From Macrostomum lignano (taxonomy: Eukaryota), in contig NIVC01001380.1 in NCBI GenBank assembly GCA_002269645.1, positions 124,001 through 188,000 on the forward strand: a stretch of 64,000 nt of DNA, read 5' to 3'. The notes under the pieces were generated by a model, which was given only the letters and a program-made list of their open reading frames with translations, had not been told where the DNA came from and did not search any database. A program made the translations under genes and the position numbers. This document shows positions 43,051 to 62,392 of the stretch, piece after piece (within the stretch, counting starts at the first letter, position 1; each line of letters opens with the position of its first letter).

Positions 43051-43723
43051 AGTGCAATCTACCTACACTATGGCAGAAGCCACTAACATTAACTGATAAG
43101 TGACAATGGAATTCCTATACTTACTGGTTGGTTGGTGCTCACCAATACCTTTATATTCCTTGTTTCTTTGCTAAGCTGAGCAAACTTATAGGGCCTGCAC
43201 AGGTGATAGAGGCAGAGAGGCAGACAACTAGAAGACCTGAGCTGGCCATGTGCAACAAGTGGTGCTACAACTTGTAAAAGCGAGCCCAGCGGGTGTTAGG
43301 GTAAATCAAGTTAGCCAGTCAGTCATTGAAAGAGCTTTCTGCGTGTACCATCTAGTGCGCCAATTGGCGTTGGTAAACATTGTGAGCTTCTGGTCTGATA
43401 GAAGCAGAGCATTTTTCTTCTCTCAAAAGTTGAATTGAGTGAAAGACAAAGAGTGAGTGAGAGAGGTGAGTTTAGGGAAATTCAACTCTAAAAATTGTAC
43501 GCTACACAAATTTGCGCGCCGCACAGGCATTAAAAATGTGCCTTGTATGCGTAGCTTTCTATAGGTACTCAACAGAACCAACAAGTAGCTATGTTGTGCT
43601 GATTGTCTCAGCTGTGCTATTCTCAACAGTTAAAATCATTTGATTGGCTCAGCTTTCTATCTGCTGCTTTGATTGAAACTATAGCACTAACCAAAAAGTT
43701 AGAATGGCAGGTGCTAAGTTCTA

Positions 43724-44499
43724 AAGGGGGGGGCATCATAAACCCGAAAAATCATAACTCCGAAAGCACTTCCCATCACAAACCCGAAGTATCACAAACC
43801 CGAAATATCACAAACCCGAAATATCACAAACCCGAAATATCATAAACCCGAAATATCACAAACCCGAAATATCATAAACCCGAAATATCATAAACCCGAA
43901 ATATCATAAACCCGAAATATCACAAACCTGAAATATCATAAACACGAAATATCATAAACCCGAAATATCATAAACCCGAAATATCATAAACCCGAAATAT
44001 CATAAACCCGAAATATCACAAACCTGAAATATCATAAACACGAAATATCATAAACCCGAAATATCATAAACCCGAAATATCACAAACCTGAAATATCATA
44101 AACACGAAATATCATAAACCCGAAATATCATAAACACGAAATATCATAAACCCGAAATATCATAAACCCGAAATATCATAAACCCGAAATATCACAAACC
44201 TGAAATATCATAAACACGAAATATCATAAACCCGAAATATCATAAACCCGAAATATCATAAACCCGAAATATCACAAACCCGAAATATCATAACTCCGAA
44301 AGTTCTAGCAATGTCCAACACTAGTTTGGTTTTCGGAGTTGTGATTTTTCGGGTTTATGATGTGTGTTGCTATTAATTTCGCAGTTTATGATATTTCGGG
44401 TTTATGATGGGCGTTGCTATTTTGTTTTTCGGAGTTATGATATTTCGTGTTTGTGATATTTCGGCTTTGTGATTTTTCGGGTTTATGATGGCGACCCTT
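43724..44499. mobile_element. Foldback-like element with arms built from the 16-bp subrepeat AAACCCGAAATATCAT; left arm expanded
   Basis: terminal AAGGGnnGnCATCATAAACCCGAAAAATCA inverted at both ends; tandem array ~43733-44300, inverted copies ~44330-44490. Confidence 0.6.
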
Positions 44500-45914
44500 C
44501 TGAAGTCTATAGATATTTCATAATAAGCTTTGCAAAGATCAGAAGCTTTGCAAGCTTAGAAATATCGATTTCTACACAGTGGTCACCTGTTTGTGAATAG
44601 CCAGACTCAGCTTCCATAGAAGTTGAGATCGGGTCGGGTGTTTTGCAATTGGGAAGTCAAACTTCTCAATCAGATCGGAAATCCCCTCTTCAGCTGGTCG
44701 CGGCTAGCATAATGGATACTGCTTTGAAAAGGAAAACTGAAAGAAAAAGTTAGTTGGCCAATTTCAAACCCAAGCCACTTTTATAATATAGAGCTGAAGT
44801 GACTTTATGAAGTGGCGGCAGTTGGAGAGATTTGCCTCCCAGGAAAATTCTTTCATACCAGCCTCTCGTCATTGGTAACTGTTGTTGACCTGAAGTGAGT
44901 CGAGTTCTCAGGGTGGACAGCTTTCTTATAGGGGTGAGACCTGACTGAAGAGAGCCGTGCTGGTCTCAGAGGCAACAGGCCTTTCAGAAGTGGTCAGGGA
45001 TCGGCTCACGCTAAGGACCTCTGCATCATTTGGACAACCTGGATTGGAACTGTGGACCGCGCCAAAACACACACACGCGACTAACTAAATAAAGTTAGAG
45101 AATTTTTAACATTTCAACAAATCTTGAGGTCCTTGGCTTGGAGGCGTTTTATGAGTTGAGAAGGCAGGCGCAAAACTGAAACTGACGCAAAACTCTAAGT
45201 GTGTTCAATCACTCTCAGGTGCTGTATTAGTAATATATTTACTAGTTTGTGTAACAGTATTCAGTTAGTATTGGTCTTTTGCCTTGAGCAGCCTGTTGCT
45301 CCACTCTTGCCCTGTCGCGTGGTCAGGCAAACTGAAGTTGGCCTCCTTGAAGATTGAATTGTGCCTGCGGATATTCAGGCAGCAGCTATGCTAGCTTTGG
45401 AGAGCGAGTGGCTGAGTGGCTTTGCGGAGGAGAGAGTGAAGTTGGGAAGGGTTTACGGTGTGAGGCAGGGGCACACACACCACACACACACACCTTTGAA
45501 GTGTCCTGTGTGTATGGGGGGGCGTTAATTCAGGGATCTCTAAACTGAACCGTTTTTTAATTAACCCCCGTCTCGCCTCGACTGCCCCCCCCCCCAATAT
45601 CCCATTCTTAACCGTTCATTCCTAAGCATTGAATAGCAAGCGCTCAAGTCGAGACCGGCAAGGATCAAGTCAGGAAGTTCGCCCCCCCCCCCCCCACCGA
45701 ACCAGCCCTCCGCCTCAGCGACTGAGCTGGGGGGAAGAGGCCAGAATGGACAATCTAATATAGTTGGTAAAAAGAGTGATTTCCAAAACCCTTTACTAAA
45801 AGACTATAATTTCCTAACTTCCTACGGTGAGAAGGGCGTTGAAGTGCTGCTCTGTAGCTCACTGCAACACCGATTCAGTAGAAGTAAACAAGTTTGAAAA
45901 TTGTGGTTTCATCA

Positions 45915-47925
45915 TAATCACATTTCTTGATAATCACAATTCTTGAGAATCACATTTCTTGATAATCACATTTCTTGAGAATCACATTTCTTGATAAACA
46001 CATTTCTTGAGAATCACAATTCTTGATAGTCACATTTCTTGATAATCACATTTCTCGAGAATCACATTTCTTGATAAACACATTTCTTGAGAATCACATT
46101 TCTTGAGAATCACATGTCTTGATAAACACATTTCTCGAGAATCACATTTCTTGAGAATCACATTTCTTGATAAACACATTTCTCGAGAATCACATTTCTT
46201 GATAATCACATTTCTTGATAAACACATTTCTCGAGAATCACATTTCTTGATAATCACATTTCTTGAGAATCACAATTCTTGAGAATCACATTTCTTGATA
46301 ATCACATTTCTCGAGAATCACATTTCTTGATAAACACATTTCTTGAGAATCACATTTCTTGAGAATCACAATTCTTGATAGTCACATTTCTTGATAATTG
46401 CATTTCTTGAGAATCACATTTCTTGAGAATCACAATTCCTGATAATCACATTTCTTGATAATTGCATTTCTTGAGAATCACATTTCTTGATAATCACATT
46501 TCTTGAGAATCACAATTCTTGATAGTCACATTTCTTGATAATTGCATTTCTTGAGAATCACATTTCTTGATAGTCACAATTCTTGAGAATCACATTTCTT
46601 GATAAACACATTTCTTGATAATCACATTTCTTGAGAATAACATTTCTTGATAAACACATTTCTCGAGAATCACATTTCTTGATAATCACATTTCTTGATA
46701 ATCGCATTTCTTGAGAATCACATTTCTTGAGAATCACATTTCTTGAGAATCACATTTCTTGAGAGTCACATTTCTTGAGAATCACATTTCTTGAGAATCA
46801 CAATTCTTGAGAATCACAATCCTTGATAGTCACATTTCTTGAGAATCACATTTCTCGAGAATTACATTTCTTGAGAATCACAATTCTTGAGAATCACATT
46901 TCTTGATAAACACATTTCTTGAGAATCACAATTCTTGAGAATCACATTTCTTGATAAACACATTTCTTGAGAATCACATTTCTTGAGAATCAAATTTCTT
47001 GAGAATCACAATTCTTGAGAATCACATTTCTTGAGAATCACATTTCTTAATAATCACATTTCTCGAGAATCACATTTCTTGAGAATCACATTTCTTGAGA
47101 ATCACATTTCTTGAGAATCACAATTCTTGATAGTCATATTTCTTGATAATCACATTTCTTGAGAATCACAATTCTTGATAGTCACATTTCTTGATTATTG
47201 CATTTCTTGATAATCACATTTCTTGATAATCACATTTCTTGATAGTCACATTTCTTGAGAATCACATTTCTTGATAATCACATTTCTTGATAGTCACATT
47301 TCTTGATAATTACATTTCTTGATAATCACATTTCTTGATAGTCACATTTCTTGAGAATCACATTTCTTGATAATCACATTTCTTGATAATCACATTTCTT
47401 GATAGTCACATTTCTTGATAATCACATTTCTTGAGAATCACAATTCTTGATAGTCACATTTCTTGATAATCACATTTCTTGATAATCACATTTCTTGATA
47501 GTCACATTTCTTGAGAATCACATTTCTTGATAATCACATTTCTTGATAGTCACATTTCTTGATAATTGCATTTCTTGAGAATCACATTTCTTGAGAATCA
47601 CATTTCTTGAGAATCACATTTCTTGATAATCACATTTCTTGATAATCACATTTCTTGATAGTCACATTTCTTGAGAATCACATTTCTTGAGAATCACATT
47701 TCTTGATAGTCACATTTCTTGATAATCACATTTCTTGATAGTCACATTTCTTGAGAATCACATTTCTTGAGAATCACATTTCTTGATAATCACATTTCTT
47801 GATAGTCACATTTCTTGAGAATCACATTTCTTGAGAATCACATTTCTTGATAATCACATTTCTTGATAGTCACATTTCTTGAGAATCACATTTCTTGATA
47901 ATCACATTTCTTGATAATCACATTT
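45915..47925. repeat. 16-bp minisatellite (CACATTTCTTGAGAAT)
   Basis: ~125 copies with GATAAT/GATAGT variants. Confidence 0.95.
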
Positions 47926-48934
47926 AGATACCATGCTTCAGAGTCAAGTTTTCATGCTTAATTGGTCAGCAAACCTTTATTAATAAAAATGTCTTGGCGC
48001 CACTACAGCCCAGACTCCCGCCGACATCATCAGCATCAGCTGCTTGATTGACGCTTAACAGTTGCTGATGTAGAAGTTTTTCTCCTTGAAGTTTTTTTTG
48101 ATTGTTATTGTTGGCATCGGGGCCTTCACTCATCTCTCTCTTCTCTCCCTCTGTGTCTCGGTCTTTAGTTAACATAACGGCAGATATTCAGCCCCAGTTT
48201 TCATTCAATCAGTGTTGTTGGGACACAGCTGAGAGTTAAGGTAAATTATTATGATTTCAGCATCTACCTAAGCAAGCAGAACTTATGGCTGTATAAGTCT
48301 GAAAACAAACAGAAAGACGCAAAGAGAGGACACGGGCATCGGGTGACAGACAAGTTGTGTGGGAACTCTCTCTGTGTGTGTCTAATCTCTGTGATGGACA
48401 GAAGGCAGCAGACACAGGCCCTATTTGATCTGATGATCTCGTTTCGGGTTAATCCCCCCCGAGTTCGGGAATTGGAATGGCAAATTAAATCGCAAAGCTC
48501 CGTCTTTCACACTCTCCGCGGTGTGTTTAGCAACCTTTTTTATTTACTAAAGAGAATATCGCTATGTGTGTCCCCTATAGTATGAATCATAATCAATCCA
48601 TAGGCTTGCAAATCTTATGTTTGCTTTTAGGGAGGTTTATATATCAGGTTGATACACCACTAGTAAGTGTGTTTAACATATGATTATTCAAATATATTGA
48701 GCTGGCATGGACAACTAATCAAAAAAAATTACTGTGCGAAAGAGATATCTTTATTCTCATTGAGTCAAAATAAAACATTATTTACTCACATTTCTAATTG
48801 CACTACTTGCATTAGTAGCAATGGTAGGGTTTTTAACTAGCTAAATGCATTGAAAGTAGGTAAAATTGTGTAGATTATTTAAAACAGCGACAAGATTACC
48901 GTAATTAGTGCCAAACCTTTATTTATACTAGCAT

Positions 48935-49475
48935 TGGCGCCAAATTTTATGTAATTGGCGCCAAAATTTCTTCATGCTAGCATTGGCGCCAAATTTTATG
49001 TAATTGGCGCCAAAATTTATTCATGCTAGAATTGGCGCCAAATTTTATGTAATTGACGCCAAAATTTCTTCTTGCTAGCATTGGCGCCAAATTTTATGTA
49101 ATTGGCGCCAAAATTTCTTCATGCTAGCATTGGCGCCAAATTTTATGTAATTGGCGCCAAAATTTATTCATGCTAGCATTGGCGCCAAATTTTATGTAAT
49201 TGACGCCAAAATTTCTTCTTGCTGGCATTGGCGCCAAATTTTATGTAATTGGCGCCAAAATTTATTAATGCTAGAATTGGCGCCAAATTTTATGTAATTG
49301 ACGCCAAATTTTATTTAATTGGCGCCAAAATTTATTCATGCTAGAATTGGCGCCAAATTTTGTGTAATTGGCGCCAAAATTTATATTCATACTAGAATTG
49401 GCGCCAAATTTTATGCAGTTGGCGCTAAAATTTATATTCATACTAGAATTGGCGCCAAATTTTATGTAATTGGTG
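48935..49475. repeat. 49-bp (21+28) minisatellite carrying two TTGGCGCCAA palindromes per unit
   Basis: ends ~65 nt before the GNPAT exon 4 acceptor. Confidence 0.95.
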
Positions 49476-49540
49476 CCGCATTTCTGTGTAAACCTGCAAA
49501 ATAATTTCAAAACTTCTCAATCCAAACCTCACCCGCCCAG

Positions 49541-49830
49541 GTATGCTTGGCGCCATCCTTGAATCGTGGTTCATGTGCGAAGTCCCTGACGTCTACCTGG
49601 TGCCCGTGAGCATCAGCTACGATAGAACCCTTGAGCAAAAACTTTACGCCTACGAACTGCTTGGGGTGCCGAAGCCAAAGGAGAGCACCTCGGGCCTGTT
49701 GAAAGCTCGCGCCCTGCTAGACGAAGACTTTGGCAGTGTGCACTTTTATTTTGATCAGCCAATCTCTTTGAGAAAATTTGCGACCGAGTATGGCGGTGTT
49801 GACAGATCTGTGCACAGCCTGGCGCCTAAG
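49541..49830 (+). CDS. GNPAT: GNPAT exon 4 (VYLVPVSISYDR...ELLGVPKPKESTSGLLKAR)
   Basis: cgcccag| acceptor; phase 1 joins exon 3 as PKT-G-MLG; highly GNPAT-specific peptide; |gtgagt donor at 49831. Confidence 0.95.
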
Positions 49831-49858
49831 GTGAGTCGCCTGTTTTTTTACTGCCAGC

Positions 49859-50165
49859 GCACTCTGTCCAATGTACACTCTGTCCAATGAACACTCTGTC
49901 CAATGAACACTCTGTCCAATGTACACTCTGTCCAATGAACACTCTGTCCAATGTACACTCTGTCCAATGTACACTCTGTCCAATGAACACTCTGTCCAAT
50001 GAACACTCTGTCCAATGAACACTCTGTACAATGTACACTTTGTCCAATGTACACTCTGTCCAATGTACACCCTGTCCAATGAACACTCTGTCCAATGTAC
50101 ACTCTGTCCAATGTACACCCTGTCCAATGAACACTCTGTCCAATGTACACCCTGTCCAATGTACA
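49859..50165. repeat. 16-bp minisatellite (CACTCTGTCCAATGTA), GNPAT intron 4
   Basis: ~19 copies filling the intron. Confidence 0.95.
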
Positions 50166-50203
50166 CTTGGTCACTAATCGCCATCACCAATATAAAACTG
50201 CAG

Positions 50204-50595
50204 GTGAAAGCCCAGCTCACGGACGCGGAGACCAGAATGCTCAAGGCCATGGCTCATCACGTGGTGTCCCGTCACTGCTTAAACGCCGTCGTGTCGCCCT
50301 TCTGCCTGCTCGCCGCTCTGCTGCTGGCCGACGGTCGAGCCTGTCGGCCGGTGCCGCTGACGGAGCTGGCCGCTGATCTGGAATGGCTGCGCCTGCGGCT
50401 GGCCGATGTTGGCAGCTTGGCCAGTCTGGACTGGCCGGCCCAGCTGTCAACTGAAGCCGTCATCGCTGAGCAGTGCCGGCTGCACTCGGATCTGGTAACT
50501 CTGCTGACTAAGGATCAGGCGGTTGCCTTGGTTACCGCGCCGGATTCCGATCTGGAAGCCAGGGCGGCCCAGCGACTGCAGCTGAGTTCATACAG
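50204..50595 (+). CDS. GNPAT: GNPAT exon 5
   Basis: actgcag| acceptor; VVSPFCLLAALLL...LDWP...SSYR matches the GNPAT mid region; |gtgaag donor, phase 2. Confidence 0.85.
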
Positions 50596-50685
50596 GTGAA
50601 GTGCAATGGGCCCAACTTGTGTAGTGTTTGAAGTTATTTTCGTTACATGTCGGTGACTCATCACGCTGTGGCTATTTGAATTTAC

Positions 50686-51008
<323 letters not shown>

Positions 51009-51019
51009 CAACCTACCAG

Positions 51020-51528
51020 GAACCACATCATGTGTCACGTGATCGAGCTCGCTCTGTACGACGCCGCGACTTTAAAATCGTCGGATGGCGGCCTCGGCGC
51101 CGCGGCCGTATTCGACACGCTGCGCCATCTGCTGCACCGGGAATTCCCTACCATCTCGGACGCAGAAGAAATGCCGGACATGGCCGATGCGCTGCCCAGG
51201 CTTCGCAATTTCGCCCGGGCGTGCCTGCGACCGAGCCTGGCTGGCTGTAGCCAGGTGTGCTCAGTTCTGCTCGAACAGCCCGAGCTGGCTGCTCAAAGCT
51301 CCGAGCGGCACATCGCCATGGCTGCTCAGAAGCGGGCATTTGCTAATCTTGTTAGTAACCCGAGTCTCTGGGACGACTGGGAGAGCGTCTCTCTGGACCT
51401 GCTGGTCAACGCTGTGCACGGCCTGCATCGATTGAGGATTCTGACCAAGTCGAGAGGCGCCGCGGCCACGGGCGATGGCGGCTCGTCGTGCGATTTCGAG
51501 AGGCTGCGTCGGCTGCATCTGATTCTGG
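51020..51528 (+). CDS. GNPAT: GNPAT exon 6
   Basis: cctaccag| acceptor gives SYR-NHI (cf. AYRNQL); SVSLDLLVNAVHGL resembles the GNPAT C-terminal region; |gtgagc donor at 51529. Confidence 0.8.
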
Positions 51529-51596
51529 GTGAGCACTTCAGCTGTGGCCGGGGTGACCGGACAGAACTCTTTAAATGGTAGAAAAGCTGAGGTGCT

Positions 51597-51885
51597 GACA
51601 GCTAATCACAGAACAGATAGAGTGATGTCAGCCAATCACAGAACAGAGGTGGTGGCAGCCAATCACAGAACAAATATTGGTGTCAGCCAATCGGAGAACA
51701 GATAGAGTGATGTCAGCCAATCACAGAACAGATAGAGTGATGTCAGCCAATCACAAAGCAGATAGAGTGATGTCAGCCAATCACAGAACAGAGGTGGTGG
51801 CAGCCAATCACAAAACAAATATTGGTGTCAGCCTATCGGAGAACAGATAAGAATGGTGGCAGACAATCACAGCACAGATAAGGTG
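51597..51885. repeat. 27-30-bp CCAAT-containing minisatellite, GNPAT intron 6
   Basis: CAGCCAATCACAGAACAGATAGAGTGATGT units. Confidence 0.9.
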
Positions 51886-51922
51886 ATGAAAGCAAATCAA
51901 AAAACCCGCTATTTGCTTTCAG

Positions 51923-51987
51923 ACCCGCTGACCAGAACCCAACCAGATGGCGTCCATGAAGTGCCGTCGACTCGATCGAGGCTCTGA
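51923..51987 (+). CDS. GNPAT: GNPAT exon 7, terminal, ends in the PTS1 tripeptide SRL (DPLTRTQPDGVHEVPSTRSRL*)
   Basis: tttgctttcag| acceptor, phase 1 matches exon 6; TGA at 51985-51987; total CDS 2034 nt = 677 aa plus stop. Confidence 0.85.
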
Positions 51988-52508
51988 TGACTTCGATGTG
52001 TTTACCAGTAATGGATGACATTATTAGTTTTAATAAGACAGGGATCAACTTTCCTGTTGTCGTAAATTTTCGCAATATTTTTAAGTTATAACAAATCATA
52101 TATGACGTATTATATTTTATCGTACGTATTGATTATTTCGATTTAATTTTTTGCTGCATGATCAACGTTATTAGTTAGCTACTCATAAAGAAGAATAATT
52201 TTAAGTCATAAATTATCATTGTCATTGCAATCTACGATGACTACTATTGTTAGTAGTGCTTGAAGTAAACGGCTAAGTCAATAGTTTTTAGGTTAGAAAA
52301 AACATGCTGGTGCTACATAAACTATAGCTACTGTTGGCAGTAGTACTTTTTGTAACATTGATTTACAGTCATGACAGGTTAATTCATAACTTCATACGTT
52401 GTAGTTTTTACTATTTTAATTGGGTTAAAAAGTTGTCAATAAAACAGGCTCTTTTCTAATCATAAAAAGCAAGAATTCGTTTCCTTCAATTAGCAGTCAT
52501 TTGCATTC

Positions 52509-52885: not shown

Positions 52886-53126
52886 TCAGCGAGACCCCCG
52901 GGAAGACGAACTCGATTTTTCGTTGCTTCTCCGAGCTTGTCGACAATTCGGCGACGGCAACGGCGACTGCGGTGGCGATCGGCGGGATCGGCGAGAGGTC
53001 GACAACGAATTTCTGGGCTTCTGTTTGTCTCCTGAGATCGAGGATTTGCTGGACTTTGCGGCTGGCGAGGCGCTGCTGCGGCGGTGGCCGGAGCGGCCGC
53101 GACTGCGACTGTGGGAGCGGCTGCGG
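52886..53126 (-). CDS. SRSF10: SRSF10/12-like exon 4 (RS domain RSRSHSRSRGRS...)
   Basis: pyrimidine-rich ccctccgccag| acceptor, phase 2; RS/SP-rich frame of ORF 52886-53152; TGA at 52888-52886. Confidence 0.8.
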
Positions 53127-53204
53127 CTGGCGGAGGGGGCAGGCGAAGTCACGTGATACGTTTTTTGGCAGGCGAGTTATTAATATTTTAGGTGTGATTC
53201 CTGA

Positions 53205-53385
53205 TTGATCTGAGATGCTGGCCCAACAACTGAGGATCTGGGAGGCTGGCCCAGCAACCGGGGATCTGGGAGGCTGGCCCAGCAACTGGAGATCTGGGAG
53301 GCTGGCCCAGCAACCGGGTATCTGGGAGGCTGGCCCAGCAACCGGGGATCTGGGAGGCTGGCCCAGCAACCGGGGATCAGGGATC
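53205..53385. repeat. 28-bp minisatellite (TGGGAGGCTGGCCCAGCAACCGGGGATC), SR gene intron 3
   Basis: ~6 copies. Confidence 0.9.
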
Positions 53386-53400
53386 GCGCAGCAGCCTCAC

Positions 53401-53571
53401 CGTCGAGTCCCGCCAGTGTCCCGCCCGGAACCCTCCATCCGCTCCATCCGCATCATCTCAGCGGGAGTTCGCCGCTGCCCTCTCGCAAACTCGATCTCGA
53501 TAGCTCGGCCAAGAAAATTGGTCCCATCCAGCCGCTTGTGCGCCTCTTTAGCGTCGCTCGAATGATTGTAA
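53401..53571 (-). CDS. SRSF10: SRSF10/12-like exon 3 (YNHSSDAKEAHKRLDGTNFLGRAIEIEFARGQRRTPAEM...)
   Basis: matches the SRSF10 RRM end (FEDVRDAEDA...GRQIEIQFAQGDRKTP); 5' boundary at AC 53573-53572 inferred; |gtgagg donor at 53400, phase 2. Confidence 0.8.
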
Positions 53572-53859
53572 GTGAAATTTTTGTCCGGATTGGCAATCGA
53601 TGGGGATTGCCTTTGTCGGTGAGTTAAAGACTCATTAATTGATGTTATTTGAGTGATAGAATTTACACATTATTACACAACTACCTACTACAAGCCTTAC
53701 TATACAATTACTTAGCTATGACAGCTCCTTAGTTACTCCTTCCTACAGAAGGAGTAATTCTAAAACTGAATAGGGTTTCAGAACCCTTACCGTACAGATC
53801 GGCTCATTTTTTAACTACAAGTCGAGATAGAGAATCTAGCGTCTGATTGTGGGCCAGAG

Positions 53860-55000
53860 AGGGGAGAGGAGAAAGGAGAGAAGGCAGGGGAGGGGAGAGA
53901 AGATAGGGGAGGGGAGAGAAGATAGGGGAGGGGAGAGAAGATAGGGGGTAGGGGAGAGAAGATAGGGTAGGGAAGGGGAGAGAAGATAGGGGGGAAGGGG
54001 AGAGAAGATAGGGGAGGGAAGGGGAGAGAAGATAGGGGAGGGGAGAGAAGATAGGGGGTAGGGGAGAGAAGATAGGGTAGGGGAGAGAAGATAGGGGGTA
54101 GGGGAGAGAAGATAGGGGGTAGGGGAGAGAAGATAGGGGAGGGGAGAGAAGATAGGGGGTAGGGGAGAGAAGATAGGGGGTAGGGGAGAGAAGATAGGGG
54201 AGGGAGGGGAGAGAAGATAGGGGGTAGGGGAGAGAAGATAGGGGAGGGGAGAGAAGATAGGGGGTAGGGGAGAGAAGATAGGGGAGGGGAGAGAAGATAG
54301 GGGGTAGGGGAGAGAAGATAGGGGGTAGGGGAGAGAAGATAGGGGGTAGGGGAGAGAAGATAGGGGAGGGAGGGGAGAGAAGATAGGGGAGGGGAGAGAA
54401 GATAGGGGGTAGGGGAGAGAAGATAGGGGAGGGAGGGGAGAGAAGATAGGGGAGGGGAGAGAAGATAGGGGGTAGGGGAGAGAAGATAGGGTAGGGAAGG
54501 GGAGAGAAGATAGGGGAGGGGAGAGAAGATAGGGGAGGGGAGAGAAGATAGGGGGTAGGGGAGAGAAGATAGGGGAGGGAGGGGAGAGAAGATAGGGGAG
54601 GGGAGAGAAGATAGGGGGTAGGGGAGAGAAGATAGGGGGTAGGGGAGAGAAGATAGGGGAGGGAGGGGAGAGAAGATAGGGGGTAGGGGAGAGAAGATAG
54701 GGGAGGGGAGAGAAGATAGGGGGTAGGGGAGAGAAGATAGGGGAGGGGAGAGAAGATAGGGGAGGGAAGGGGAGAGAAGATAGGGGAGGGAAGGGGAGAG
54801 AAGATAGGGGGTAGGGGAGAGAAGATAGGGGAGGGGAGAGAAGATAGGGGAGGGAGGGGGAGAGAAGATAGGGGAGGGAAGGGGAGAGAAGATAGGGGAG
54901 GGAAGGGGAGAGAAGATAGGGGAGGGAGGGGAGAGAAGATAGGGGAGGGGAGAGAAGATAGGGGGTAGGGGAGAGAAGATAGGGTAGGGAAGGGGAGAGG
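53860..55000. repeat. G/A-rich minisatellite (GGGGAGAGAAGATAGG core) inside the U12 intron
   Basis: ~21-26-bp units. Confidence 0.95.
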
Positions 55001-55039
55001 AAACAGGAGAGAAAAGAGAAGAGAGATGAGACCAGGGAA

Positions 55040-55168
55040 CAGAGGCGTAGTGAGGGGTGATGGGGGGAGGTGTTTCACCTCCTTCGAATAGCCAAAACGT
55101 GTTTTCAGTCTGTATTTCTCCTAGGGGCAGCCTATCCCCTAAAGAAGAAATTTCTGGCTACGCGCCTG
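55040..55168. mobile_element. ~129-bp MITE related to the 59604-59747 element
   Basis: TIRs CAGAGGCGTAG / CTACGCGCCTG (9/11); shares GCGTAnnCAGAAATTT...GGGG with the other MITE; no clear TSD. Confidence 0.5.
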
Positions 55169-55314
55169 CAAGAGAGAGATTAGTGAGAAGAGACACAAAC
55201 CCTGAGCAAGCCGCAGTTTTCCAACCCCTGCTTTATCTTTAAAGTATAACAAGTAAATTCTAGCAAAGATTAGCCGAACAGTCAAAACAGTTTCAGATGA
55301 ATTCATATTTCTTT

Positions 55315-55324
55315 AAAAGGATAT
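55315..55324 (-). other. U12-type (minor spliceosome) 5' splice site ATATCCTTTT
   Basis: exact U12 AT-type donor consensus directly after the phase-2 exon end GTGCA. Confidence 0.85.
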
Positions 55325-55429
55325 TGCACAAAAGCGTAGCCCTTCATTCGACCTGAATAATAGTCCAGCGGCACAGTCAGATCATAAATCGAGCCGTATT
55401 TGGAGAATAAGTGACGAATCTCTTCGTGC
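55325..55429 (-). CDS. SRSF10: SRSF10/12-like exon 2 (HEEIRHLFSKYGSIYDLTVPLDYYSGRMKGYAFV), ends at a U12 donor
   Basis: actttcag| acceptor; 105 nt; aligns without gaps to [34 protein letters not shown] (SRSF10, from recall); followed by ATATCCTTTT. Confidence 0.9.
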
Positions 55430-55714
55430 CTGAAAGTTTTCAAGTTATAAGCAGGTCAGTAACTCTTAACAACTTCAATATGCAAAGAATAAGGTTTTCA
55501 AATAATTTAAGATAATTAAAATTCCTTCAAAAATCAACTTCCCAGCATAGTGATTTGAATGCAAAATTTAATATGCATGTATGCACTTTATGAAGGCAAA
55601 CGTGTACTCTTTATTGTACTTACTTTATGTACTTTACGCACATGCACTTTTACATTCATTACTTTTTAATTCTACCTGCAAAATACATTGCCTGTGAAGT
55701 ATCTCTGGGTGGAT

Positions 55715-56080
55715 TCTGTACGTTTTGGATGAGTTATGTATGTTTTGGATCGATTCTGTATGGTTTTTTATGGATTCTGTATGCTTTGAATGAGTTTCTG
55801 TATGATTTTGGATGAGTTCTGTATGCTTTGGGTGAGTTCTGTATGCTTTGGATGAGTTCTGTATGCTTTGGATGAGTTCTGTATGCTTTTGATGAGTTAT
55901 GTATGCTTTGGATGAGTTCTGTATGCTTTGAATGAGTTCTGTATGCTTTGGATGAGTTCTGTATGCTTTGGATGAGTTCTGTATGCTTTGGATGAGTTCT
56001 GTATGCTTTGGATGAGTTCTGTATGCTTTGGATGAGCTCTGTATGCTTTGGATGAGTTCTGTATGCTTTGGATGGATTCT
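55715..56080. repeat. 20-bp minisatellite (GGATGAGTTCTGTATGCTTT)
   Basis: ~17 copies. Confidence 0.9.
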
Positions 56081-56523
56081 GTGCGAATGGTGCGAATGCT
56101 ACTTCAACTGTCACTTTATAAGTCGAGGAAGCAAGAGACAGCAAGCACAATGTCCTTGAATAAGCATGCCCTCCCGCCTGTTGAAGCAATACCTGTAATT
56201 GATTTCTCGCTAGTTTGAATTGAATTGCAACAGGAAGGAACCCACATTAACTTCTTTCAATCTTCATAATCGATGCTTTGCAATTGAAAATTCAAACCGG
56301 AAAAATTTGAATTGAAAACAATTTGAATAAAATGTTTCACTGAATCAAAACGCTTTTATTTGCGACAGACAATAGGGGGTGGCGACAGACAATAGGCTAT
56401 TATAGGAGCGACTAGTCCAACACAAAATCATTCAAAACACAATAAGATTCAACCGTTAACTGTGACAAATTTCACTATAATGAGAGTCCATTCCAACTGA
56501 CTTTCTCAACACGTCCCATTTCC

Positions 56524-57618
56524 TCAGTTTTCGTTTATTAACATTAAACGCTTGAAGCATTGCCGGAATTGCGGACTACGACGCAGCAGCACAAAGAAAC
56601 TCGCGCACTGATTAACGAGAGCCAGAGTGAGGCTGCAATAAGCAAAGTTAGTTATCATGCTTAAATAGTCAATATAGTCGCCCATGTCTAGCAGATTAAC
56701 GGAGATTTCGCCAGCAAGCCTCAGAGTCATAGCTGGCAAGTTTAGTGCCAAGTAAACAATCGATAGAATAAAAACAATTATTGTTCCATTAATTTCGGCA
56801 ATCGAGTAGCGCATAGCAACGCTTTGAGGCGACAGAATTCGACGCCTATTGTTGGCAGCCAGTCGAACCCGACTCAACAGAAATCCATTCAGGCCCAACA
56901 TCAGTAGCATGAAAACCAGTGGAGGATTTGACAGCAACGAAGTGTAAGCCAGCATGGCTAATCTAACCTCGTGGCCGCGATAGCAATACTTCAGCACTGT
57001 TCCGTCTGGCATGGTGGCAGTCACGTGACCAACTAGAATCCCATTCGGCAGGGCAATTAAAACCGACAGCAAGAATGAAGCAACCAAAGCTTTAATGGCC
57101 CATCGTATGCCTACTTTTTGCATGACGAGCGGTCGGTGAACAACCAAAACCCGGTCGATCACCAGGACTAACATCCATAAACACGAGAGCGTGTGACAGA
57201 AATTCAGAGCATAGCGAGACACTTTGCACATGTTATCGCTCAGATTGTAGCTGATAAAAGCCAGTCGACCTCTAGTGATCCACGGCAGGCCTTTGGTGAG
57301 GAACACGTTAAACACTCCAATAACTACGAGGCTCAATATGTCGACAATGGCATTGCAGCCAAGGAAAAGATTCTGCCGAGTTAGCGGTCGAATCCGGTTC
57401 AGCATGATATGAGCAACAATGATGTTTCCAATTGCTCCAACAATTATTATAATTGGTAGCACGATGCCCGATATTGAGCCAACCACGTGAGACATGATGC
57501 AGAATAAGCGCCTGGATGGATCTCCACTCAGGCAGTCTCTCACCATTTGCATTGCATTCTCAGTGTATCCGGTTTTTACTACCACAGTTTCAGAGTTGTT
57601 TTGAGCACCTTGCAGCAT
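56524..57618 (-). CDS. Intronless class A (rhodopsin-like) 7TM GPCR, Srw/FMRFamide-receptor-like orphan, ~364 aa
   Basis: seven hydrophobic segments, GN in TM1, D in TM2, C at the top of TM3, DRV for DRY, NLP in TM6, N-terminal NNS sequon; first ATG at 57618 (the ORF track start is TTG). Confidence 0.9.
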   Translation of the reverse strand: MLQGAQNNSETVVVKTGYTENAMQMVRDCLSGDPSRRLFCIMSHVVGSISGIVLPIIIIVGAIGNIIVAHIMLNRIRPLTRQNLFLGCNAIVDILSLVVIGVFNVFLTKGLPWITRGRLAFISYNLSDNMCKVSRYALNFCHTLSCLWMLVLVIDRVLVVHRPLVMQKVGIRWAIKALVASFLLSVLIALPNGILVGHVTATMPDGTVLKYCYRGHEVRLAMLAYTSLLSNPPLVFMLLMLGLNGFLLSRVRLAANNRRRILSPQSVAMRYSIAEINGTIIVFILSIVYLALNLPAMTLRLAGEISVNLLDMGDYIDYLSMITNFAYCSLTLALVNQCASFFVLLRRSPQFRQCFKRLMLINEN

Positions 57619-57822
57619 TTCACTGTACTTGTCAGTGTCTAACAAATTCCAAAGACGATTTTTGCTTTGCGCAAAGGTTTTGAATGCAAGCTATTATTAA
57701 TGAAAATTTCTTCGATTCATCATCCAATAAGAATGATGATGGCAGCACAAGCACAGCTGTTCAATCTTTCCTGGTTGATGATTTGCTGACAAAAAAAGAA
57801 TGTATCGCTGGTATGCTGGTTG

Positions 57823-59370
57823 CCCCCAGGAACCCGGGTCCTGCACATAATAGTGTGATGAACTACAGATATCTGTGCAGTATGAGTCTGGTATGGTCTC
57901 TTTCCCAGCCAGCGATGCTCACACCTGTCTCATCAGACGGGTTGATAGTTCAAGAGACTCCGCGGCCATACCATCTGCCACCATCGGGGCGCCCCAGCGA
58001 GACCAAGCAGCTGAGTACCATTGCCCACGACAGCGGAAGCTTCCCAATCTGGGGCCCTGAGCCCACTGAAGTCCCTGCCCAGGATAGGGAGGCTGATGCA
58101 GCCGGAAGGGTGGACAGTTCACCTGATGAAGGCTCCACCGAACCCCGGGCCCCCTACGCTGAGGCGGCAAAGAGGCAACCGGCGGTTGTCATCCTGGGAA
58201 GGACGTGCGCCTGTTCCCCGACCAGTTGAAGCAGAAGAGCTGCACTGTTGATGGCCTACTGTGGAAGCTCACTCTGAAAGGCACACCTCTGAACATTCAC
58301 TAGAATGCGACGAGGGACTCGTGCCTTCTTATTTGGCCCGTGATGCTGACCCGGGATGGCGGCTCCTTTGAGCTGCTGCCCTAGCAGAGCTGGGACCTCA
58401 AATTAGCCTTCTGTGCAGAGGACGAGCGCCTCCGGACCAAGAGGCATAGAATCTGGGTTCTGGCCAGGAGCGTCGTTACCTCTGCTGACGAGCTCCGGAA
58501 GAGACTGCTTTCAGTCAACCGAGAGCTTCCCGCTAGTGGTGCATGACACCCTAAAGCGCACCGACGGAACCGGGAATTTACTTTTTTTTCACTCCGACAG
58601 CCAAGCAGCCCTTCGGGCCCTCTGCCGCAGCACCACCAGCTTCAGATCTGTCCCGGACTGCAACGCTCAGTTCAATGGACTCGCTCAGGGCAACCAGGTG
58701 GGGCTCAGATGGATCCCGAGCCACGCTGGTTTCCTCGGCAACGAGCGCGCTGACCTGCTGGCCAAGGCTGGCTCCGCCGGCGCGCTGCTGGGGCCGGGCC
58801 CAGGGATCCCCATCCCCGCCTCGGTGATCAAATCCCGCATCAAGCGCTGGACTGACTCCAAGCATCTCCAGAGGTGGCGCGACACTTGGAACGGCAGGCA
58901 ATCCCGTGCTGCCGTCCCCTGTCTCTCTCCCCTCCTGCGTAGAGCCCTCCTCAGGCTCAACCGCAGAGACTTCAGAGCAGTCAGCATGGCCCTCTTCGGG
59001 CATGGCTGCTTCTCTCGCCACCGTTTCCTTCAGGGCCAGGTACCTGAGGAGCGGTGCCCCTTCTGCCGCTCAGGCAGTGAAAACGCTGAGCACTCATCAG
59101 GGCCAAGCTACCTCGGGCCAAACCCGGTTCTCTCAGACGTTTTCAGACCCGAGAGCATCCCGCTGCTCCCCCGGTACCTCAAGGACACGGGACGAGCTGA
59201 GTTCTTTCCCAACGCCGGTAAGGAGGACCGCGCTGCAGGCGAGACCGACGGGTCCCCCTGAGCGACAACGCTTCGACGGAAGTCATTGGTCGCCAGAAGC
59301 CAGCGAAATGGGCGGTCTCCTCCACCTCCTCGCTGCATCCGCCGGCCGATGCCCCCTGCAGCTGAGTCAA
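57823..59370 (+). mobile_element. Degenerate, internally deleted non-LTR retrotransposon (Loa/Lian-like): ORF1-like remnant plus RNase H and C-terminal Cys region
   Basis: DSQAAL and WIPSHAGFLGNERADLLAK RNase H motifs; RQSR...LLRLNRR...LFGHG...CPFC tail; GGTATGCTGGTTG duplicated at 57810-57822 and 59371-59383. Confidence 0.8.
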
Positions 59371-59595
59371 GGTATGCTGGTTGATGATTTGCTCACAAGA
59401 AGAGAGAAGGCGTCATTGGTATGCTGGTTGGTGATTTGCTCACAAGAAGAGAGAAGGCGTCATTGGTATGCTGGTTGGTGATTTGCTCACAAGAAGAGAG
59501 AAGGCGTCATTGGTATGCTGGTTGGTGATTTGCTCACAAGAAGAGAGAAGGCGTCATTGGTATGCTGGTTGGTGATTTGCTCACAAGAAGAGAAC
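59371..59595. repeat. 47-bp minisatellite (GGTATGCTGGTTGGTGATTTGCTCACAAGAAGAGAGAAGGCGTCATT)
   Basis: ~4.7 copies, with diverged copies at ~57770-57822 and ~59750-59800. Confidence 0.9.
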
Positions 59596-59603
59596 GTATC
59601 GCT

Positions 59604-59747
59604 CAGTGGCGTAAACAGAAATTTGTTGAAGGGGGTGGATTCTAGAGGGTAAAACCCAAAGGGGGCGGAGTGAGTGGCTCTGTATTTTGGCGAAAATGGG
59701 CTTGGAAAATGCACAGAACAGAACACCCCCTCCCAGTTACGCTAAAG
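59604..59747. mobile_element. 144-bp MITE, hAT-like
   Basis: 8-bp TSD GTATCGCT at 59596-59603 and 59748-59755; imperfect TIRs CAGTGGCGTAA / TTACGCTAAAG; internal GGGGGTG...CACCCCC. Confidence 0.65.
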
Positions 59748-60344
59748 GTATCGCTGATATGCTGGTAGGTGATTTTCTTACAAAGAAGAGAAGGCATCGA
59801 CACTCAAGGAGGCAATCTATTTTGCTGAAATCTTTTGATTCAAAAGGAACCTGTCAGTAATTATGTAAGTGTGAGAAAAACAAGCACAGGTATCTATTAG
59901 TACTAGCTTCAGGCGTGCTCTTGCAGTGCCCTTTTTTTCTTGCAAGTCTCATGCAAGTTTTAATCCAACTCTATAGTTGTGCAATGTGATTTACTGCTTG
60001 TTCTGTCTTAATTGTCTCTAAATTCTATAAGTCCTAGAGAATTTCTATTTGATTACTCCGGTTCAATACTTGAGTTTGCTTTTCTTTTACCATCTTAGGT
60101 TACTTCATGATTCAGTTTTCAAACAGTTTTCAATTCTGACTTCTTATCAAAGGCTAACAGAAATTTTCTACTGGCACTCATAGTACTCAGTCAGTTTGCT
60201 TGTTGCATAGCATAAGGTATGTAGCTTGGTGCTGCTAAAATAAAAAAGTTGACCCACAAACATTGAGGGGACAAGCAGTTCTGCTTATTCTGCAAACCAA
60301 TGACAACATACATGAAATATGATAATTCAGATGACCAAAAATTA

Positions 60345-60990
60345 AGTTTTTATAATTTTTCAAGGACAACTTAAGTAGAATAGAAAACCTTGTTTCTTGG
60401 AAATTTTTTTGAAGGCAATACATTACAGAGATAAGAAATTTTCATCTTTATAGCACAAAAATTGTTATTGCTTTTGATAGGAGGCAGATCCAGCATTCAC
60501 CTTTTGATATGTTGTGCCTTTCTTATTGCTCTATTGATATTCATAAAGCTTTTTGTTCAGAAAATTAGGATTCTATGTTAATTTTTATTCTATATACATT
60601 TGCACATATCTTGTGCCGAGAAACCCTTATAATGGCATAGCTAGGCTCTTTGGTTTTGAGTCTATTTTATCATTATTAGCTGACTGTGTAACATGGGTAG
60701 CAGAGATGATACAATAGATTAAAAATATTAGAACTATGCATGATTAAAAAATTAACATGGAATCCTAATTTTCTAAACAAAAAGCTTTATATCAATAGAG
60801 CAATAGAAGGGCACAACATATTAAAAGATGAACATTGGATCTGCCTCCTATCAAAAGCAATAACAATTTTTGCATTGAAAAATGAAAACTTCCTATCTCT
60901 GTAGTCTCTTTAAAAACTGCCTTCAAAAATTTTCTAAGAATTGAGGTTTCCCATCCTTCTACCTAAGTCATCTTAGAATTTTTTTATTTT
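60345..60990. repeat. Long imperfect inverted repeat (~245-bp arms, ~155-bp spacer), probable MITE/foldback
   Basis: ATTGTTATTGCTTTTGATAGGAGGCAGATCCA at ~60460 has its reverse complement at ~60840; similarity extends across both arms. Confidence 0.75.
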
Positions 60991-62336
60991 TATGAGCAAC
61001 ATAAATAATTATTCAAAATAAGATTTTAGCTACAAAAAACTTGCATAATTTCATTTTAAAATTTTGTATATTTCACTTTTTACATGTAAAGCAGATTTAT
61101 TGCATTTAGAAGCAAAGCCACTAAGCACAATATTAACATTTAGGAAAGAAAAGAAAAGAAAGAAAAGAAAGAAAAGAAAGAAAGAGTCTTATAAAATTGT
61201 TCCTTACATTATGCAATGTGAACAAAAAGGCAGACATCAAAAAGTGCTCATTTTAACCATATAGAAAGTTAAATTCAAAGGCAGAATATGTCTATATAAA
61301 ATGATATAATAAATTTCCTGTTGTTTTTTAAATGTCTTATGCTCATATTTTTTATATCATTGCAATGGCCTCCAGGCTATTGTCAGGAAGGTGCACTTTT
61401 TGCACTAGATTAAATTTATCCCATTGTGCCATGCACTAAAGAATTTTTTCTTTGCACCAATATGGGCACTTTGGGTTGCCATACCCCAAAATTAAAAAAG
61501 TAAAAAAGCTATTTTAACTTTTAGTAGTTTTACTATTTTATTATTTTTTTAGATTCCAATTTTTGTCTAAGCCAAAAATAGTAAATAGCAATATTGAATA
61601 GCAAATTAGTGGCAAAATGAATTTGAACTTCAAGGAGTCTTTTATGTTTGTAATAAAATTAAAGTTATAACTATAACAAACAAACTTCCAAAAATAAAAA
61701 ATATATATAGCATGGGCCTATCACAAAATCTGCTTAATTCTTATATTATTTATAATCAAAGAAATCTATACCATATGCCTATAATGCCAAGTTGCAGGCT
61801 CTCATTATTCCTTTTATACTAAATGCACTGAGTATACCAGAGAAATAGCCTATTTGTAGCAAAAAATTGGTGAAATCTATTGCCTCTTTGACCATGGCCT
61901 TGCTTGAGGTTATCATTATATTCTTAAAGTTTTGTTTGAATTACTCTCAAACATTTTTTTTAATAATTGCTTCAGTGCAACTTAATAATCAGGGGCTTAG
62001 AATTTTTAGGCATTCTTAGTATACACCTAAACTTTAGTCTAAAAAACCTCTTTGTATACAATACACTAGATACCTTTTTGATGATGGAGTAGTAGGCTAG
62101 TAGCTCTAAATATTTAGTCAAAATTATTTGATTTCATAAAATTTCAGAATGACCCTTATCATAATTTTGAATCTCTAGGAAATTTTGGTATCCAATGGAA
62201 TTTACTTTAATCAATAATCAAAGTACTAAATTTAAGTTAAACATTAAAACAATAAAAGAGGAACCTAAACTAAACCTAGCTTAATAATTATTAGGGCAAA
62301 GATAAAATTTGACAGCAGCAATAAATTTATACTTAC

Positions 62337-62392
62337 TTAGCCTGATTAGAAATATTGCGAACATACAAAACACGATAATTTGTTTTCGACAT
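62337..62392 (-). CDS. SRSF10: SRSF10/12-like SR protein, exon 1 (MSKTNYRVLYVRNISNQAK)
   Basis: RNP2-like LYVRNI; |gtaagt donor at 62336, phase 2 matching exon 2; too short for the ORF track. Confidence 0.8.

What the first reader, a model, noticed from the sequence alone, without database searches (positions are those of the whole stretch)
53572..55324. U12-type AT-AC intron at the conserved RNP1 position of an SRSF10/12 orthologue
Seen: the 105-nt exon ends GCTTTTGTGCA and is followed by ATATCCTTTT, an exact minor-class donor. No GT donor restores the RRM, and read-through gives QYPFKEI*. An AC at 53573-53572 restores KGYAFVH-YNHSSDAKEA in register with GFAYVQ-FEDVRDAEDA. Established: vertebrate SRSF10 has a minor AT-AC intron at this position that controls its expression, and the minor spliceosome has been lost in several invertebrate lineages such as C. 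elegans. Inference: this organism retains a functional minor spliceosome and this ancient intron, which standard gene predictors would miss.
Basis: partly seen in the sequence, partly recalled or inferred. Interest (0 to 1): 0.8.

Follow-up and report, generated by a model that had tools for sequence, protein, structure and literature searches.

The report
Minor-class AT-AC intron in flatworm SRSF10
The flatworm Macrostomum lignano keeps the ancient minor-spliceosome (AT-AC) intron that splits the RNA-binding domain of splicing factor SRSF10; this is a real but expected feature, and its one oddity is a branch site unusually far from the 3' splice site.

Summary
The window is Macrostomum lignano contig NIVC01001380.1. 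On the minus strand, a 105-nt exon (55429-55325) ends ...GTGCA and is followed by ATATCCTTT. Joining it to 53571, after the AC at 53573/72, rebuilds the RNP1 motif KGYAFVHY.

The spliced CDS is identical to GenBank protein BOX15_Mlig026735g1. That protein comes from a purely RNA-seq-based annotation, so the junction has transcript support.

The same intron occurs in four cestodes, a trematode, a brachiopod, a rotifer and a frog: same codon, phase 2, ATATCCTT donor, AC acceptor and U12-type branch site. A monogenean has lost it.

Four flatworm gene models read through the donor as "EYPF". This confirms that ab initio predictors miss the intron.

Minor snRNAs and minor introns were already reported in Schistosoma, and the vertebrate SRSF10 minor intron is published. 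This is therefore a new member of a known kind, of modest interest.

One feature is atypical. The only good branch site, TCTTTAACTCAC, lies 52 nt upstream of the AC, against 10-26 nt in the orthologues and a functional range of 10-20 nt. A 35-nt hairpin between them could shorten the effective distance to about 17 nt.

Minor-spliceosome dependence, and the presence of its components in this genome, could not be tested directly.

The parts
62337..62392 (-). Predicted exon 1: ATG at 62392-62390, MSKTNYRVLYVRNISNQA(K), contains RNP2 (LYVRNI); followed by the GTAAGT donor at 62336
   Evidence: The phase fits exon 2 (aa|g = K), and the intron position matches the cestode and frog genes. Inferred: the GenBank model is 5'-partial and does not include this exon.
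55430..62336 (-). Intron 1, 6907 nt, GT-AG (GTAAGT...ttcAG)
55325..55429 (-). Exon 2, 105 nt: (K)HEEIRHLFSKYGSIYDLTVPLDYYSGRMKGYAFV + CA (first two bases of the RNP1 position-7 codon)
   Evidence: The GenBank CDS starts inside this exon at 55392.
55316..55324 (-). U12-type 5' splice site ATATCCTTT, 9/9 match to the RTATCCTTT consensus
   Evidence: consensus as given in PMC8199999
53572..55324 (-). Intron 2, 1753 nt, AT-AC, phase 2, inside RNP1 of the RRM
   Evidence: the spliced CDS is identical to P0001. Orthologous introns.
53868..54984 (-). About 1.1 kb tandem array inside intron 2, CT-rich on the sense strand, period 21/40 nt
53619..53630 (-). Branch-site sequence TCTTTAACTCAC. Predicted branch A at 53624/53625, with 52 nt between A53624 and the end of the intron
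   Evidence: Best U12-snRNA duplex in the last 90 nt (-8.6 kcal/mol, bulged A), comparable to the orthologues. The degenerate motif TYYTTRAC is expected about once per 5 kb.
53585..53619 (-). Predicted hairpin (CCG...GGCAAUC-loop-GAUUGCC...CGG, -11.6 kcal/mol) between the branch site and the 3' splice site
   Evidence: z = -4.1 against shuffles, but 12-14% of genomic 52-mers fold as well. Any role in shortening the spacing is inference.
53611..53612 (-). Alternative in-frame AG, 12-13 nt after the branch A; use would insert 13 aa (QSPSIANPDKNFT) and break RNP1
   Evidence: RRM_1 match truncated to 1-45/70. Not in the annotated transcript.
53572..53573 (-). 3' splice site AC (ttTCAC|T), with no polypyrimidine tract upstream
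53401..53571 (-). Exon 3: (H)YNHSSDAKEAHKRLDGTNFLGRAIEIEFARGQRRTPAEMM..., the rest of the RRM plus the SRSF10-type motif
53127..53400 (-). Intron 3, 274 nt, GT-AG (GTGAGG...CCGCCAG), containing a 28-nt x3 repeat
52886..53126 (-). Exon 4 coding part: RS domain (RRSRSHSRSRGRSGHRRSS...), stop TGA at 52888-52886

Best explanation
Intron 2 (55324-53572, minus strand) of the Macrostomum lignano SRSF10/12 orthologue is a U12-type AT-AC intron. It is orthologous to the minor intron after exon 2 of vertebrate SRSF10.

Proposed mechanism:
1. U11, and later U6atac, pairs with the perfect ATATCCTTT donor.
2. U12 pairs with TCTTTAACTCA (53630-53620), bulging A53624/5 as the branch point.
3. The intron is cut after the AC at 53573/72. 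This joins GTGCA to TTAC and completes RNP1 (KGYAFVHY) and the RRM.

Shown here: the motifs, the exact junction in a transcript-derived protein, and positional conservation across Bilateria.

Inferred: dependence on the minor spliceosome, the identity of the branch A, and a role for the 35-nt hairpin (53619-53585). That hairpin may bring the unusually distant branch site (52 nt) to an effective distance of about 17 nt from the AC, and may mask the nearer AC, AA and AG dinucleotides.
For: - Donor: 9/9 match to the U12 consensus, placed exactly at the exon end.
- Junction: the spliced CDS 55392-55325 + 53571-53401 + 53126-52886 translates to a protein identical to P0001, BOX15_Mlig026735g1. That annotation was built only from RNA-seq (STAR/StringTie, BLAT-mapped de novo transcripts, TACO, TransDecoder; PMC5730564).
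- Domain: the AC join gives a full Pfam RRM_1 match (62 bits, 1-69/70).
- Orthology: the same codon and phase, an ATATCCTT donor, an AC acceptor and a TCCTTAAC-like branch site occur in Echinococcus, Mesocestoides, Anoplocephala, Dibothriocephalus, Opisthorchis, Lingula, Brachionus and frog SRSF10.
- Published counterpart: mammalian Srsf10 exon 2 uses an AT-AC U12-type 5' splice site (PMC7244321).
- Branch site: TCTTTAACTCAC forms the best duplex with the U12 branch-site-binding sequence in the last 90 nt (-8.6 kcal/mol against -6.1 to -11.5 in the orthologues).
- There is no polypyrimidine tract before the AC.
- No GT/GC-AG pair restores the RRM.
- The minor spliceosome is documented in other flatworms.
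Against: - The branch site to 3' splice site spacing is 52 nt. The orthologues have 10-26 nt, and the literature gives a functional range of 10-20 nt (PMC8199999 citing Dietrich 2001).
- Several A-N dinucleotides, including an in-frame AG, lie at the 'right' distance from the branch site.
- The hairpin is not exceptional against the genomic background (12-14% of windows fold as well). It cannot be tested by covariation, because the duplicate locus is identical there.
- No minor snRNA or minor-specific protein of M. lignano could be examined.
- I did not see reads myself. RNA support is indirect, through the annotation.
Confidence: 0.85

Rival explanations
1. The minor spliceosome often or mainly uses a 3' site close to the branch site: AG 53612/11 (in frame, +13 aa) or AC 53616/15 (frameshift). 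The annotated AC junction would then be only one of several isoforms, possibly forming an unproductive-splicing control analogous to vertebrate SRSF10 autoregulation. This is not exclusive of the main explanation.
For: These dinucleotides lie 9-13 nt after the branch A, the optimal U12 spacing. The AG join keeps the frame.
Against: The only protein in the RNA-based annotation carries the distal AC junction. No isoform with the 13-aa insert was found in the protein collection. The insert truncates the RRM match. No orthologue has such an insert.
Confidence: 0.2
2. The branch point used for the AC site is a cryptic adenosine near the 3' end (for example in CCGGACAAAAA, 53588-53578), not TCTTTAAC. 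The upstream motif would be a relic or decoy and the hairpin irrelevant.
For: ATCCGGAC sits 12 nt before the AC, the canonical distance. The U12 spliceosome is reported not to scan for distal 3' sites (Dietrich 2001 abstract, from my own knowledge).
Against: Pairing of that sequence with U12 is poor and it is absent from the four best duplexes. TCTTTAACTC shares the extended TTAACTC complementarity seen in the orthologues. A TYYTTRAC motif within 60 nt of the acceptor is expected by chance only about 1% of the time.
Confidence: 0.2
3. It is a U2-dependent AT-AC intron removed by the major spliceosome.
For: U2-type AT-AC introns exist (PMC1557818). The distant branch site would be unremarkable for U2.
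Against: The donor is the exact U11/U6atac-binding consensus ATATCCTTT rather than a GTRAGT-like ATAAGT. There is no polypyrimidine tract. A U12-complementary branch site is present. The intron is orthologous to a demonstrated minor intron.
Confidence: 0.03
4. It is an annotation or assembly artefact, or a pseudogene, with the two exons not really joined in vivo.
For: The GenBank model is partial. The assembly is highly duplicated and reads multi-map between two near-identical loci.
Against: The ORF is intact through the RRM and RS domain. The annotation is RNA-only and reproduces the junction exactly. Both loci carry identical splice signals. The same structure occurs in eight other species.
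Confidence: 0.02

Closest known systems
Vertebrate SRSF10 (FUSIP1/SRp38) exon 2-exon 4 minor AT-AC intron (Meinke et al. 2020, PMC7244321)
   Same: Same gene family. Same codon of RNP1 and same phase 2. ATATCCTT donor, AC acceptor, U12-type branch site and a 105-nt upstream exon (frog locus L008).
   Different: Branch site to 3' splice site spacing is 52 nt here against 10 nt in frog. No consensus-like competing U2 donor lies within 150 nt downstream, and no recognisable poison exon was seen, so the autoregulatory circuit shown in mammals is not evident. The intron carries a 1.1-kb tandem repeat.
Orthologous AT-AC introns of parasitic flatworm FUSIP1/SRSF10 genes (Echinococcus multilocularis, Mesocestoides corti, Anoplocephala perfoliata, Dibothriocephalus latus, Opisthorchis viverrini)
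   Same: Identical position and phase. ATATCCTTTT donor, AC acceptor and TTCCTT(A/C/G)AC branch site.
   Different: Their spacing is 12-26 nt. M. lignano has TCTTTAAC (one C-to-T change, G-U wobble with U12) at 52 nt, with an intervening hairpin.
U2-dependent AT-AC introns (class II AT-AC)
   Same: AT-AC termini.
   Different: Those have GTRAGT-like donors with A at +1 and a polypyrimidine tract. Here the donor is the U12 consensus and there is no such tract.

Membership tests
U12-type (minor-class) intron | 5' splice site matching /RTATCCTTT | tested here: met
   ATATCCTTT at 55324-55316, 9/9 (consensus)
U12-type (minor-class) intron | Branch-site sequence resembling TCCTTAAC and complementary to U12 snRNA | tested here: met
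   TCTTTAACTCAC at 53630-53619, 7/8 with one G-U wobble. Best U12 duplex in the last 90 nt, -8.6 kcal/mol with a bulged A. The U12 sequence was written from memory.
U12-type (minor-class) intron | Typical property, a functional constraint rather than a classifier: branch site 10-20 nt from the 3' splice site | tested here: not met
   52 nt in linear sequence, against the 10-20 nt range. A predicted hairpin would leave 4 + 13 unpaired nt, but that is inference.
U12-type (minor-class) intron | No polypyrimidine tract; AT-AC (or GT-AG) termini; 3' end YAC | tested here: met
   ...CCGGACAAAAATTTCAC|T
U12-type (minor-class) intron | Removal depends on U11/U12/U4atac/U6atac snRNPs | not testable with these tools
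   Needs knock-down or in vitro splicing. Only precise removal is supported, via the RNA-derived annotation.
U12-type (minor-class) intron | The host genome encodes minor snRNAs and U11/U12-specific proteins | tested here: inconclusive
The ZCRB1 searches listed only vertebrates, or for the 10 sampled clusters oomycete, arthropod, plant or unnamed Logan/JGI sequences. These components are documented for Schistosoma.
U12-type (minor-class) intron | Positional orthology to an established minor intron | tested here: met
   Same codon and phase as the frog SRSF10 AT-AC intron and the mammalian one described in PMC7244321
SRSF10/SRSF12 (FUSIP1) SR proteins | Single N-terminal RRM followed by an RS-rich C-terminus | tested here: met
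   RRM_1 at residues 9-78, 62 bits. Exon 4 encodes RRSRSHSRSRGRSGHRRSS....
SRSF10/SRSF12 (FUSIP1) SR proteins | Closest named relatives are SRSF10/12, with the shared post-RRM motif IE(I/V)xF(A/T)xGxR(K/R)TPxxM | tested here: met
   Top named hits are FUSIP1, SRSF10 and SRSF12 from cestodes, molluscs, a brachiopod and vertebrates. TRA2 and SRSF2 score far lower. Motif shown in the alignment.
SRSF10/SRSF12 (FUSIP1) SR proteins | Function as a phosphorylation-dependent splicing regulator | not testable with these tools

The most novel reading that the evidence does not exclude
The M. lignano intron is a natural U12-type intron whose branch site lies 52 nt from its 3' splice site. That is more than twice the 20-nt upper limit reported for mammalian U12 introns. 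It would work because a 35-nt hairpin loops out the spacer and hides the proximal A-N dinucleotides. This would be RNA-structure-assisted 3' splice-site choice by the minor spliceosome, or evidence that the flatworm minor spliceosome has relaxed spacing rules (cestode orthologues already sit at 20-26 nt).
Probability: 0.3. Interest if true: 0.5.

Novelty: new member of a known kind. Interest (0 to 1): 0.27.

Why it matters
- It places the SRSF10 minor intron in the bilaterian ancestor and shows it survives in a free-living, early-branching flatworm (Macrostomorpha) as well as in cestodes and a trematode. This gives a simple marker for minor-spliceosome retention in the phylum.
- It explains recurrent mis-annotations ('...EYPF...' read-through models) of this gene in helminth genome releases.
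- The atypical 52-nt branch-site spacing offers a small, testable natural experiment on how the minor spliceosome picks its 3' splice site.
- None of this overturns current understanding.

Tried and rejected
- **GT/GC-AG alternatives:** I enumerated all GT/GC donors (55370-54990) against AG acceptors (53720-53530). Twelve are in frame. None keeps RNP1 and the loop, and none equals P0001.
- **AG 53612/11 join:** in frame, but it truncates the RRM match and is absent from the databases.
- **Duplicate locus L001 as a conservation or covariation test:** the last 120 nt of the intron are identical, so it is uninformative.
- **Hairpin significance:** z = -4.1 against shuffles, but only the 12-14th percentile against real 52-mers of the window, so I keep it as a hypothesis.
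- **Minor-spliceosome components in M. lignano:**
  - Rfam on the window found nothing.
  - A human ZCRB1 query returned only vertebrates in the 120 listed hits.
  - A representative-library search plus a name look-up of 10 divergent clusters gave oomycete, tick, mite and plant names, with several clusters unnamed (Logan/JGI only) and no flatworm name.
  - Text search of the supplements of two M. lignano papers for RNPC3, ZCRB1, SNRNP25, SNRNP35 and ZMAT5, plus SNRNP48 in one paper and SRSF10 in the other, found nothing.
  - Literature searches found no paper combining 'U12-type' or RNPC3 with Macrostomum.
- **Competing downstream U2 donor as in mammals:** none scoring at least 7/9 within 150 nt in M. 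lignano.

Full report
**Observation.** On the minus strand, a 105-nt exon (55429-55325) is preceded by ttcAG. It ends GCTTTTGTGCA and is followed by ATATCCTTTT (55324-55315). Read-through gives QYPFKEI*. An AC lies at 53573/53572, and joining 55325 to 53571 gives ...KGYAFVHYNHSSDAKEAHKRLDG... in frame. The intron is 1753 nt and phase 2. The coordinates and sequences of the finding are therefore exact.

RTATCCTTT as a bare motif is not rare: there is 1 match and 1.7 are expected in the window. What is significant is where it sits, exactly at the nucleotide where RRM homology to SRSF10 breaks off.

I enumerated GT/GC donors against AG acceptors around the two exons. Twelve combinations are in frame. 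All delete or disrupt RNP1 and the loop, all use weak donors, and none matches the known protein.

**Gene model and identity.**
- Exon 1 (62392-62337): ATG, MSKTNYRVLYVRNISNQA-, followed by a GTAAGT donor.
- Exon 2: 55429-55325.
- Exon 3: 53571-53401, followed by a GTGAGG donor.
- Exon 4: 53126-52886, an RS domain ending in TGA.

Together these give a 190-aa protein. Pfam finds a complete RRM_1 (62 bits, model positions 1-69 of 70). The best named relatives are FUSIP1, SRSF10 and SRSF12 from cestodes, molluscs, Lingula and vertebrates; TRA2 and SRSF2 score far lower. The post-RRM motif IEIEFARGQRRTPAEM is shared with them.

**Source and RNA support.** The window is Macrostomum lignano assembly Mlig_3_7, contig NIVC01001380.1. 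A 95-98% identical duplicate lies on NIVC01001679.1. GenBank protein BOX15_Mlig026735g1 (P0001, 159 aa, 5'-partial) is encoded at both places. Translating 55392-55325 + 53571-53401 + 53126-52886 reproduces it exactly.

According to Wudarski et al. 2017, that annotation was produced only from RNA evidence: STAR and StringTie, BLAT-mapped de novo transcripts, TACO, TBONE and TransDecoder (PMC5730564). The AT-AC junction is therefore supported by transcripts, although I did not see the reads myself. At the nucleotide level the junction cannot be shifted without changing the protein.

**Orthologous introns.** The same intron is present in eight other species. In each it has the same codon (RNP1 position 7), phase 2, an ATATCCTT donor, an AC acceptor and a TCCTTAAC-like branch site:
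- Cestodes: Echinococcus multilocularis, Mesocestoides corti, Anoplocephala perfoliata, Dibothriocephalus latus.
- Trematode: Opisthorchis viverrini.
- Brachiopod: Lingula anatina.
- Rotifer: Brachionus calyciflorus.
- Frog: Rhinophrynus dorsalis SRSF10.

Meinke et al. 2020 describe the mammalian counterpart as an AT-AC, U12-type 5' splice site in exon 2 (PMC7244321). The monogenean Cichlidogyrus casuarinus has no intron at this codon, which is a lineage-specific loss.

Gene models of M. corti, D. latus, O. viverrini and Sparganum proliferum read through the donor as '...EYPF...'. This directly confirms that ab initio predictors miss the intron.

**Splicing signals and the one anomaly.** The donor matches the U12 consensus 9/9, and there is no polypyrimidine tract before the AC. 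The only good branch site in the last 90 nt is TCTTTAACTCAC (53630-53619). It forms a bulged-A duplex of -8.6 kcal/mol with the U12 branch-site-binding sequence, within the range of the orthologues (-6.1 to -11.5). It also shares their extended TTAACTC complementarity (the U12 sequence was written from memory). A TYYTTRAC motif within 60 nt of the acceptor would occur by chance about 1% of the time.

However, 52 nt separate the branch A from the end of the intron. The corresponding distances in the orthologues are:

| Species | Distance (nt) |
|---|---|
| Frog | 10 |
| Rotifer | 11 |
| Lingula | 11 |
| Opisthorchis | 12 |
| M. corti | 20 |
| D. latus | 20 |
| A. perfoliata | 23 |
| E. multilocularis | 26 |
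| M. lignano | 52 |

The literature gives a functional range of 10-20 nt with an optimum of 11-13 nt (PMC8199999 citing Dietrich et al. 2001).

Between the branch site and the AC lies a predicted hairpin (53619-53585; a 3-bp and a 7-bp stem; -11.6 kcal/mol). It would leave 4 + 13 unpaired nucleotides, and it would bury the proximal AC (53616/15), the AAA run and the in-frame AG (53612/11). The fold has z = -4.1 against shuffles, but 12-14% of real 52-mers in the window fold as well. The duplicate locus is identical there, so no covariation test is possible. I therefore offer the hairpin-bridging idea as a hypothesis with probability of about 0.3.

The alternatives are a cryptic branch point near the AC, or partial use of the proximal sites. 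The in-frame AG would add 13 aa and truncate the RRM match. No such isoform is in the protein collection.

**Minor spliceosome in the organism.** This could not be tested directly. Searches with human ZCRB1 returned only vertebrates. The representative-library search and cluster look-up gave oomycete, tick, mite and plant names, or clusters with no source name. Text searches found nothing for M. lignano.

The literature establishes U11, U12, U4atac and U6atac in Schistosoma (PMC2770079), and minor introns and snRNAs there (PMC10639083). Combined with precise removal of an intron carrying a perfect U11/U6atac-binding donor, retention of minor splicing in M. lignano is the natural inference. It is not a surprising one.

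**Comparison with the vertebrate regulatory circuit.** In mammals the minor donor competes with a downstream major donor that leads to a poison exon. In M. lignano no GT site scoring at least 7/9 against MAG|GTRAGT lies within 150 nt downstream. Such sites exist in Lingula (+16) and M. corti (+72), but their use is untested. The claim that the intron 'controls expression' is therefore not transferable on present evidence.

**Verdict.** The finding is real and correctly interpreted. It is a new, RNA-supported member of a known kind: the conserved SRSF10 minor intron, in a phylum already known to have minor splicing. It is already implicit in the GenBank gene model. Its only unusual aspect is the long, possibly hairpin-bridged spacing between branch site and 3' splice site.

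Confidence that it is a U12-type AT-AC intron spliced at 55325^53571 is 0.85. Interest is 0.27.

Noticed in passing
window 53868-54984 (inside intron 2) and 53300-53395 (intron 3): A 1.1-kb tandem array (period 21/40 nt, CT-rich on the gene's sense strand) fills most of the minor intron. A 28-nt x3 repeat follows the exon 3 donor. The array length differs between the two genomic copies (intron 2 is 71 nt shorter in L001).
   Followed up: partly
P0016 (Mesocestoides corti, L004), P0397 (Dibothriocephalus latus, L011), P0398 (Opisthorchis viverrini, L009), P0399 (Sparganum proliferum): Deposited gene models read through the ATATCCTTT donor ('...FAF[VI]EYPF...') and then truncate or mis-join. These are systematic annotation errors caused by the AT-AC intron.
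   Followed up: yes
L010:2700-2760 (Cichlidogyrus casuarinus, monogenean): The orthologue has no intron at the RNP1 codon (GTAGAG TATGAGGAT is contiguous). This is loss of the minor intron in this lineage, while cestodes and a trematode keep it.
   Followed up: partly
L005:2698 (Lingula), L004:2759 (M. corti), L008:4822 (frog): Consensus-like U2 donors lie shortly downstream of the minor donor: Lingula cag|GTAAAA at +16, M. corti caa|GTAAGT at +72, and frog ttg|GTGAGG at +26 (6/9 match). This is reminiscent of the competing major 5' splice site of mammalian Srsf10. None is evident in M. lignano. Usage is untested.
   Followed up: partly
window 62337-62392; L001:1-3313: The GenBank model is 5'-partial, starting at 55392. 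A plausible exon 1 (ATG, RNP2) lies 6.9 kb upstream in the window. The duplicate locus loses homology upstream of about L001:3313 and has no copy of this exon within its 10-kb flank.
   Followed up: partly
L006:1501-2268 (JGI metagenome contig Ga0620986_01084, 207 kb): An intronless SRSF10-like gene (P0010, 255 aa) lies on a long metagenome contig of an unidentified eukaryote. Related Logan transcript contigs (P0003, P0004, P0006, P0007, P0012) are the closest non-flatworm relatives of the M. lignano RRM.
   Followed up: no
window 20833-21691; 50700-51010; 4037-5095: Three other repeat features: a 23-nt tandem array (about 38 copies, contains TCTTTGAC); a roughly 300-nt trinucleotide (TAG/TAC-type) microsatellite; and TCCTTAAC recurring at about 330-nt intervals, which indicates a longer tandem repeat.
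   Followed up: no
window ~42885-51988, + strand (L002:13406-22507): The neighbouring gene downstream of SRSF10, on the opposite strand, encodes a glycerol-3-phosphate acyltransferase-like protein (Pfam Acyltransferase + GPAT_C, 677 aa model running off the locus).
   Followed up: no
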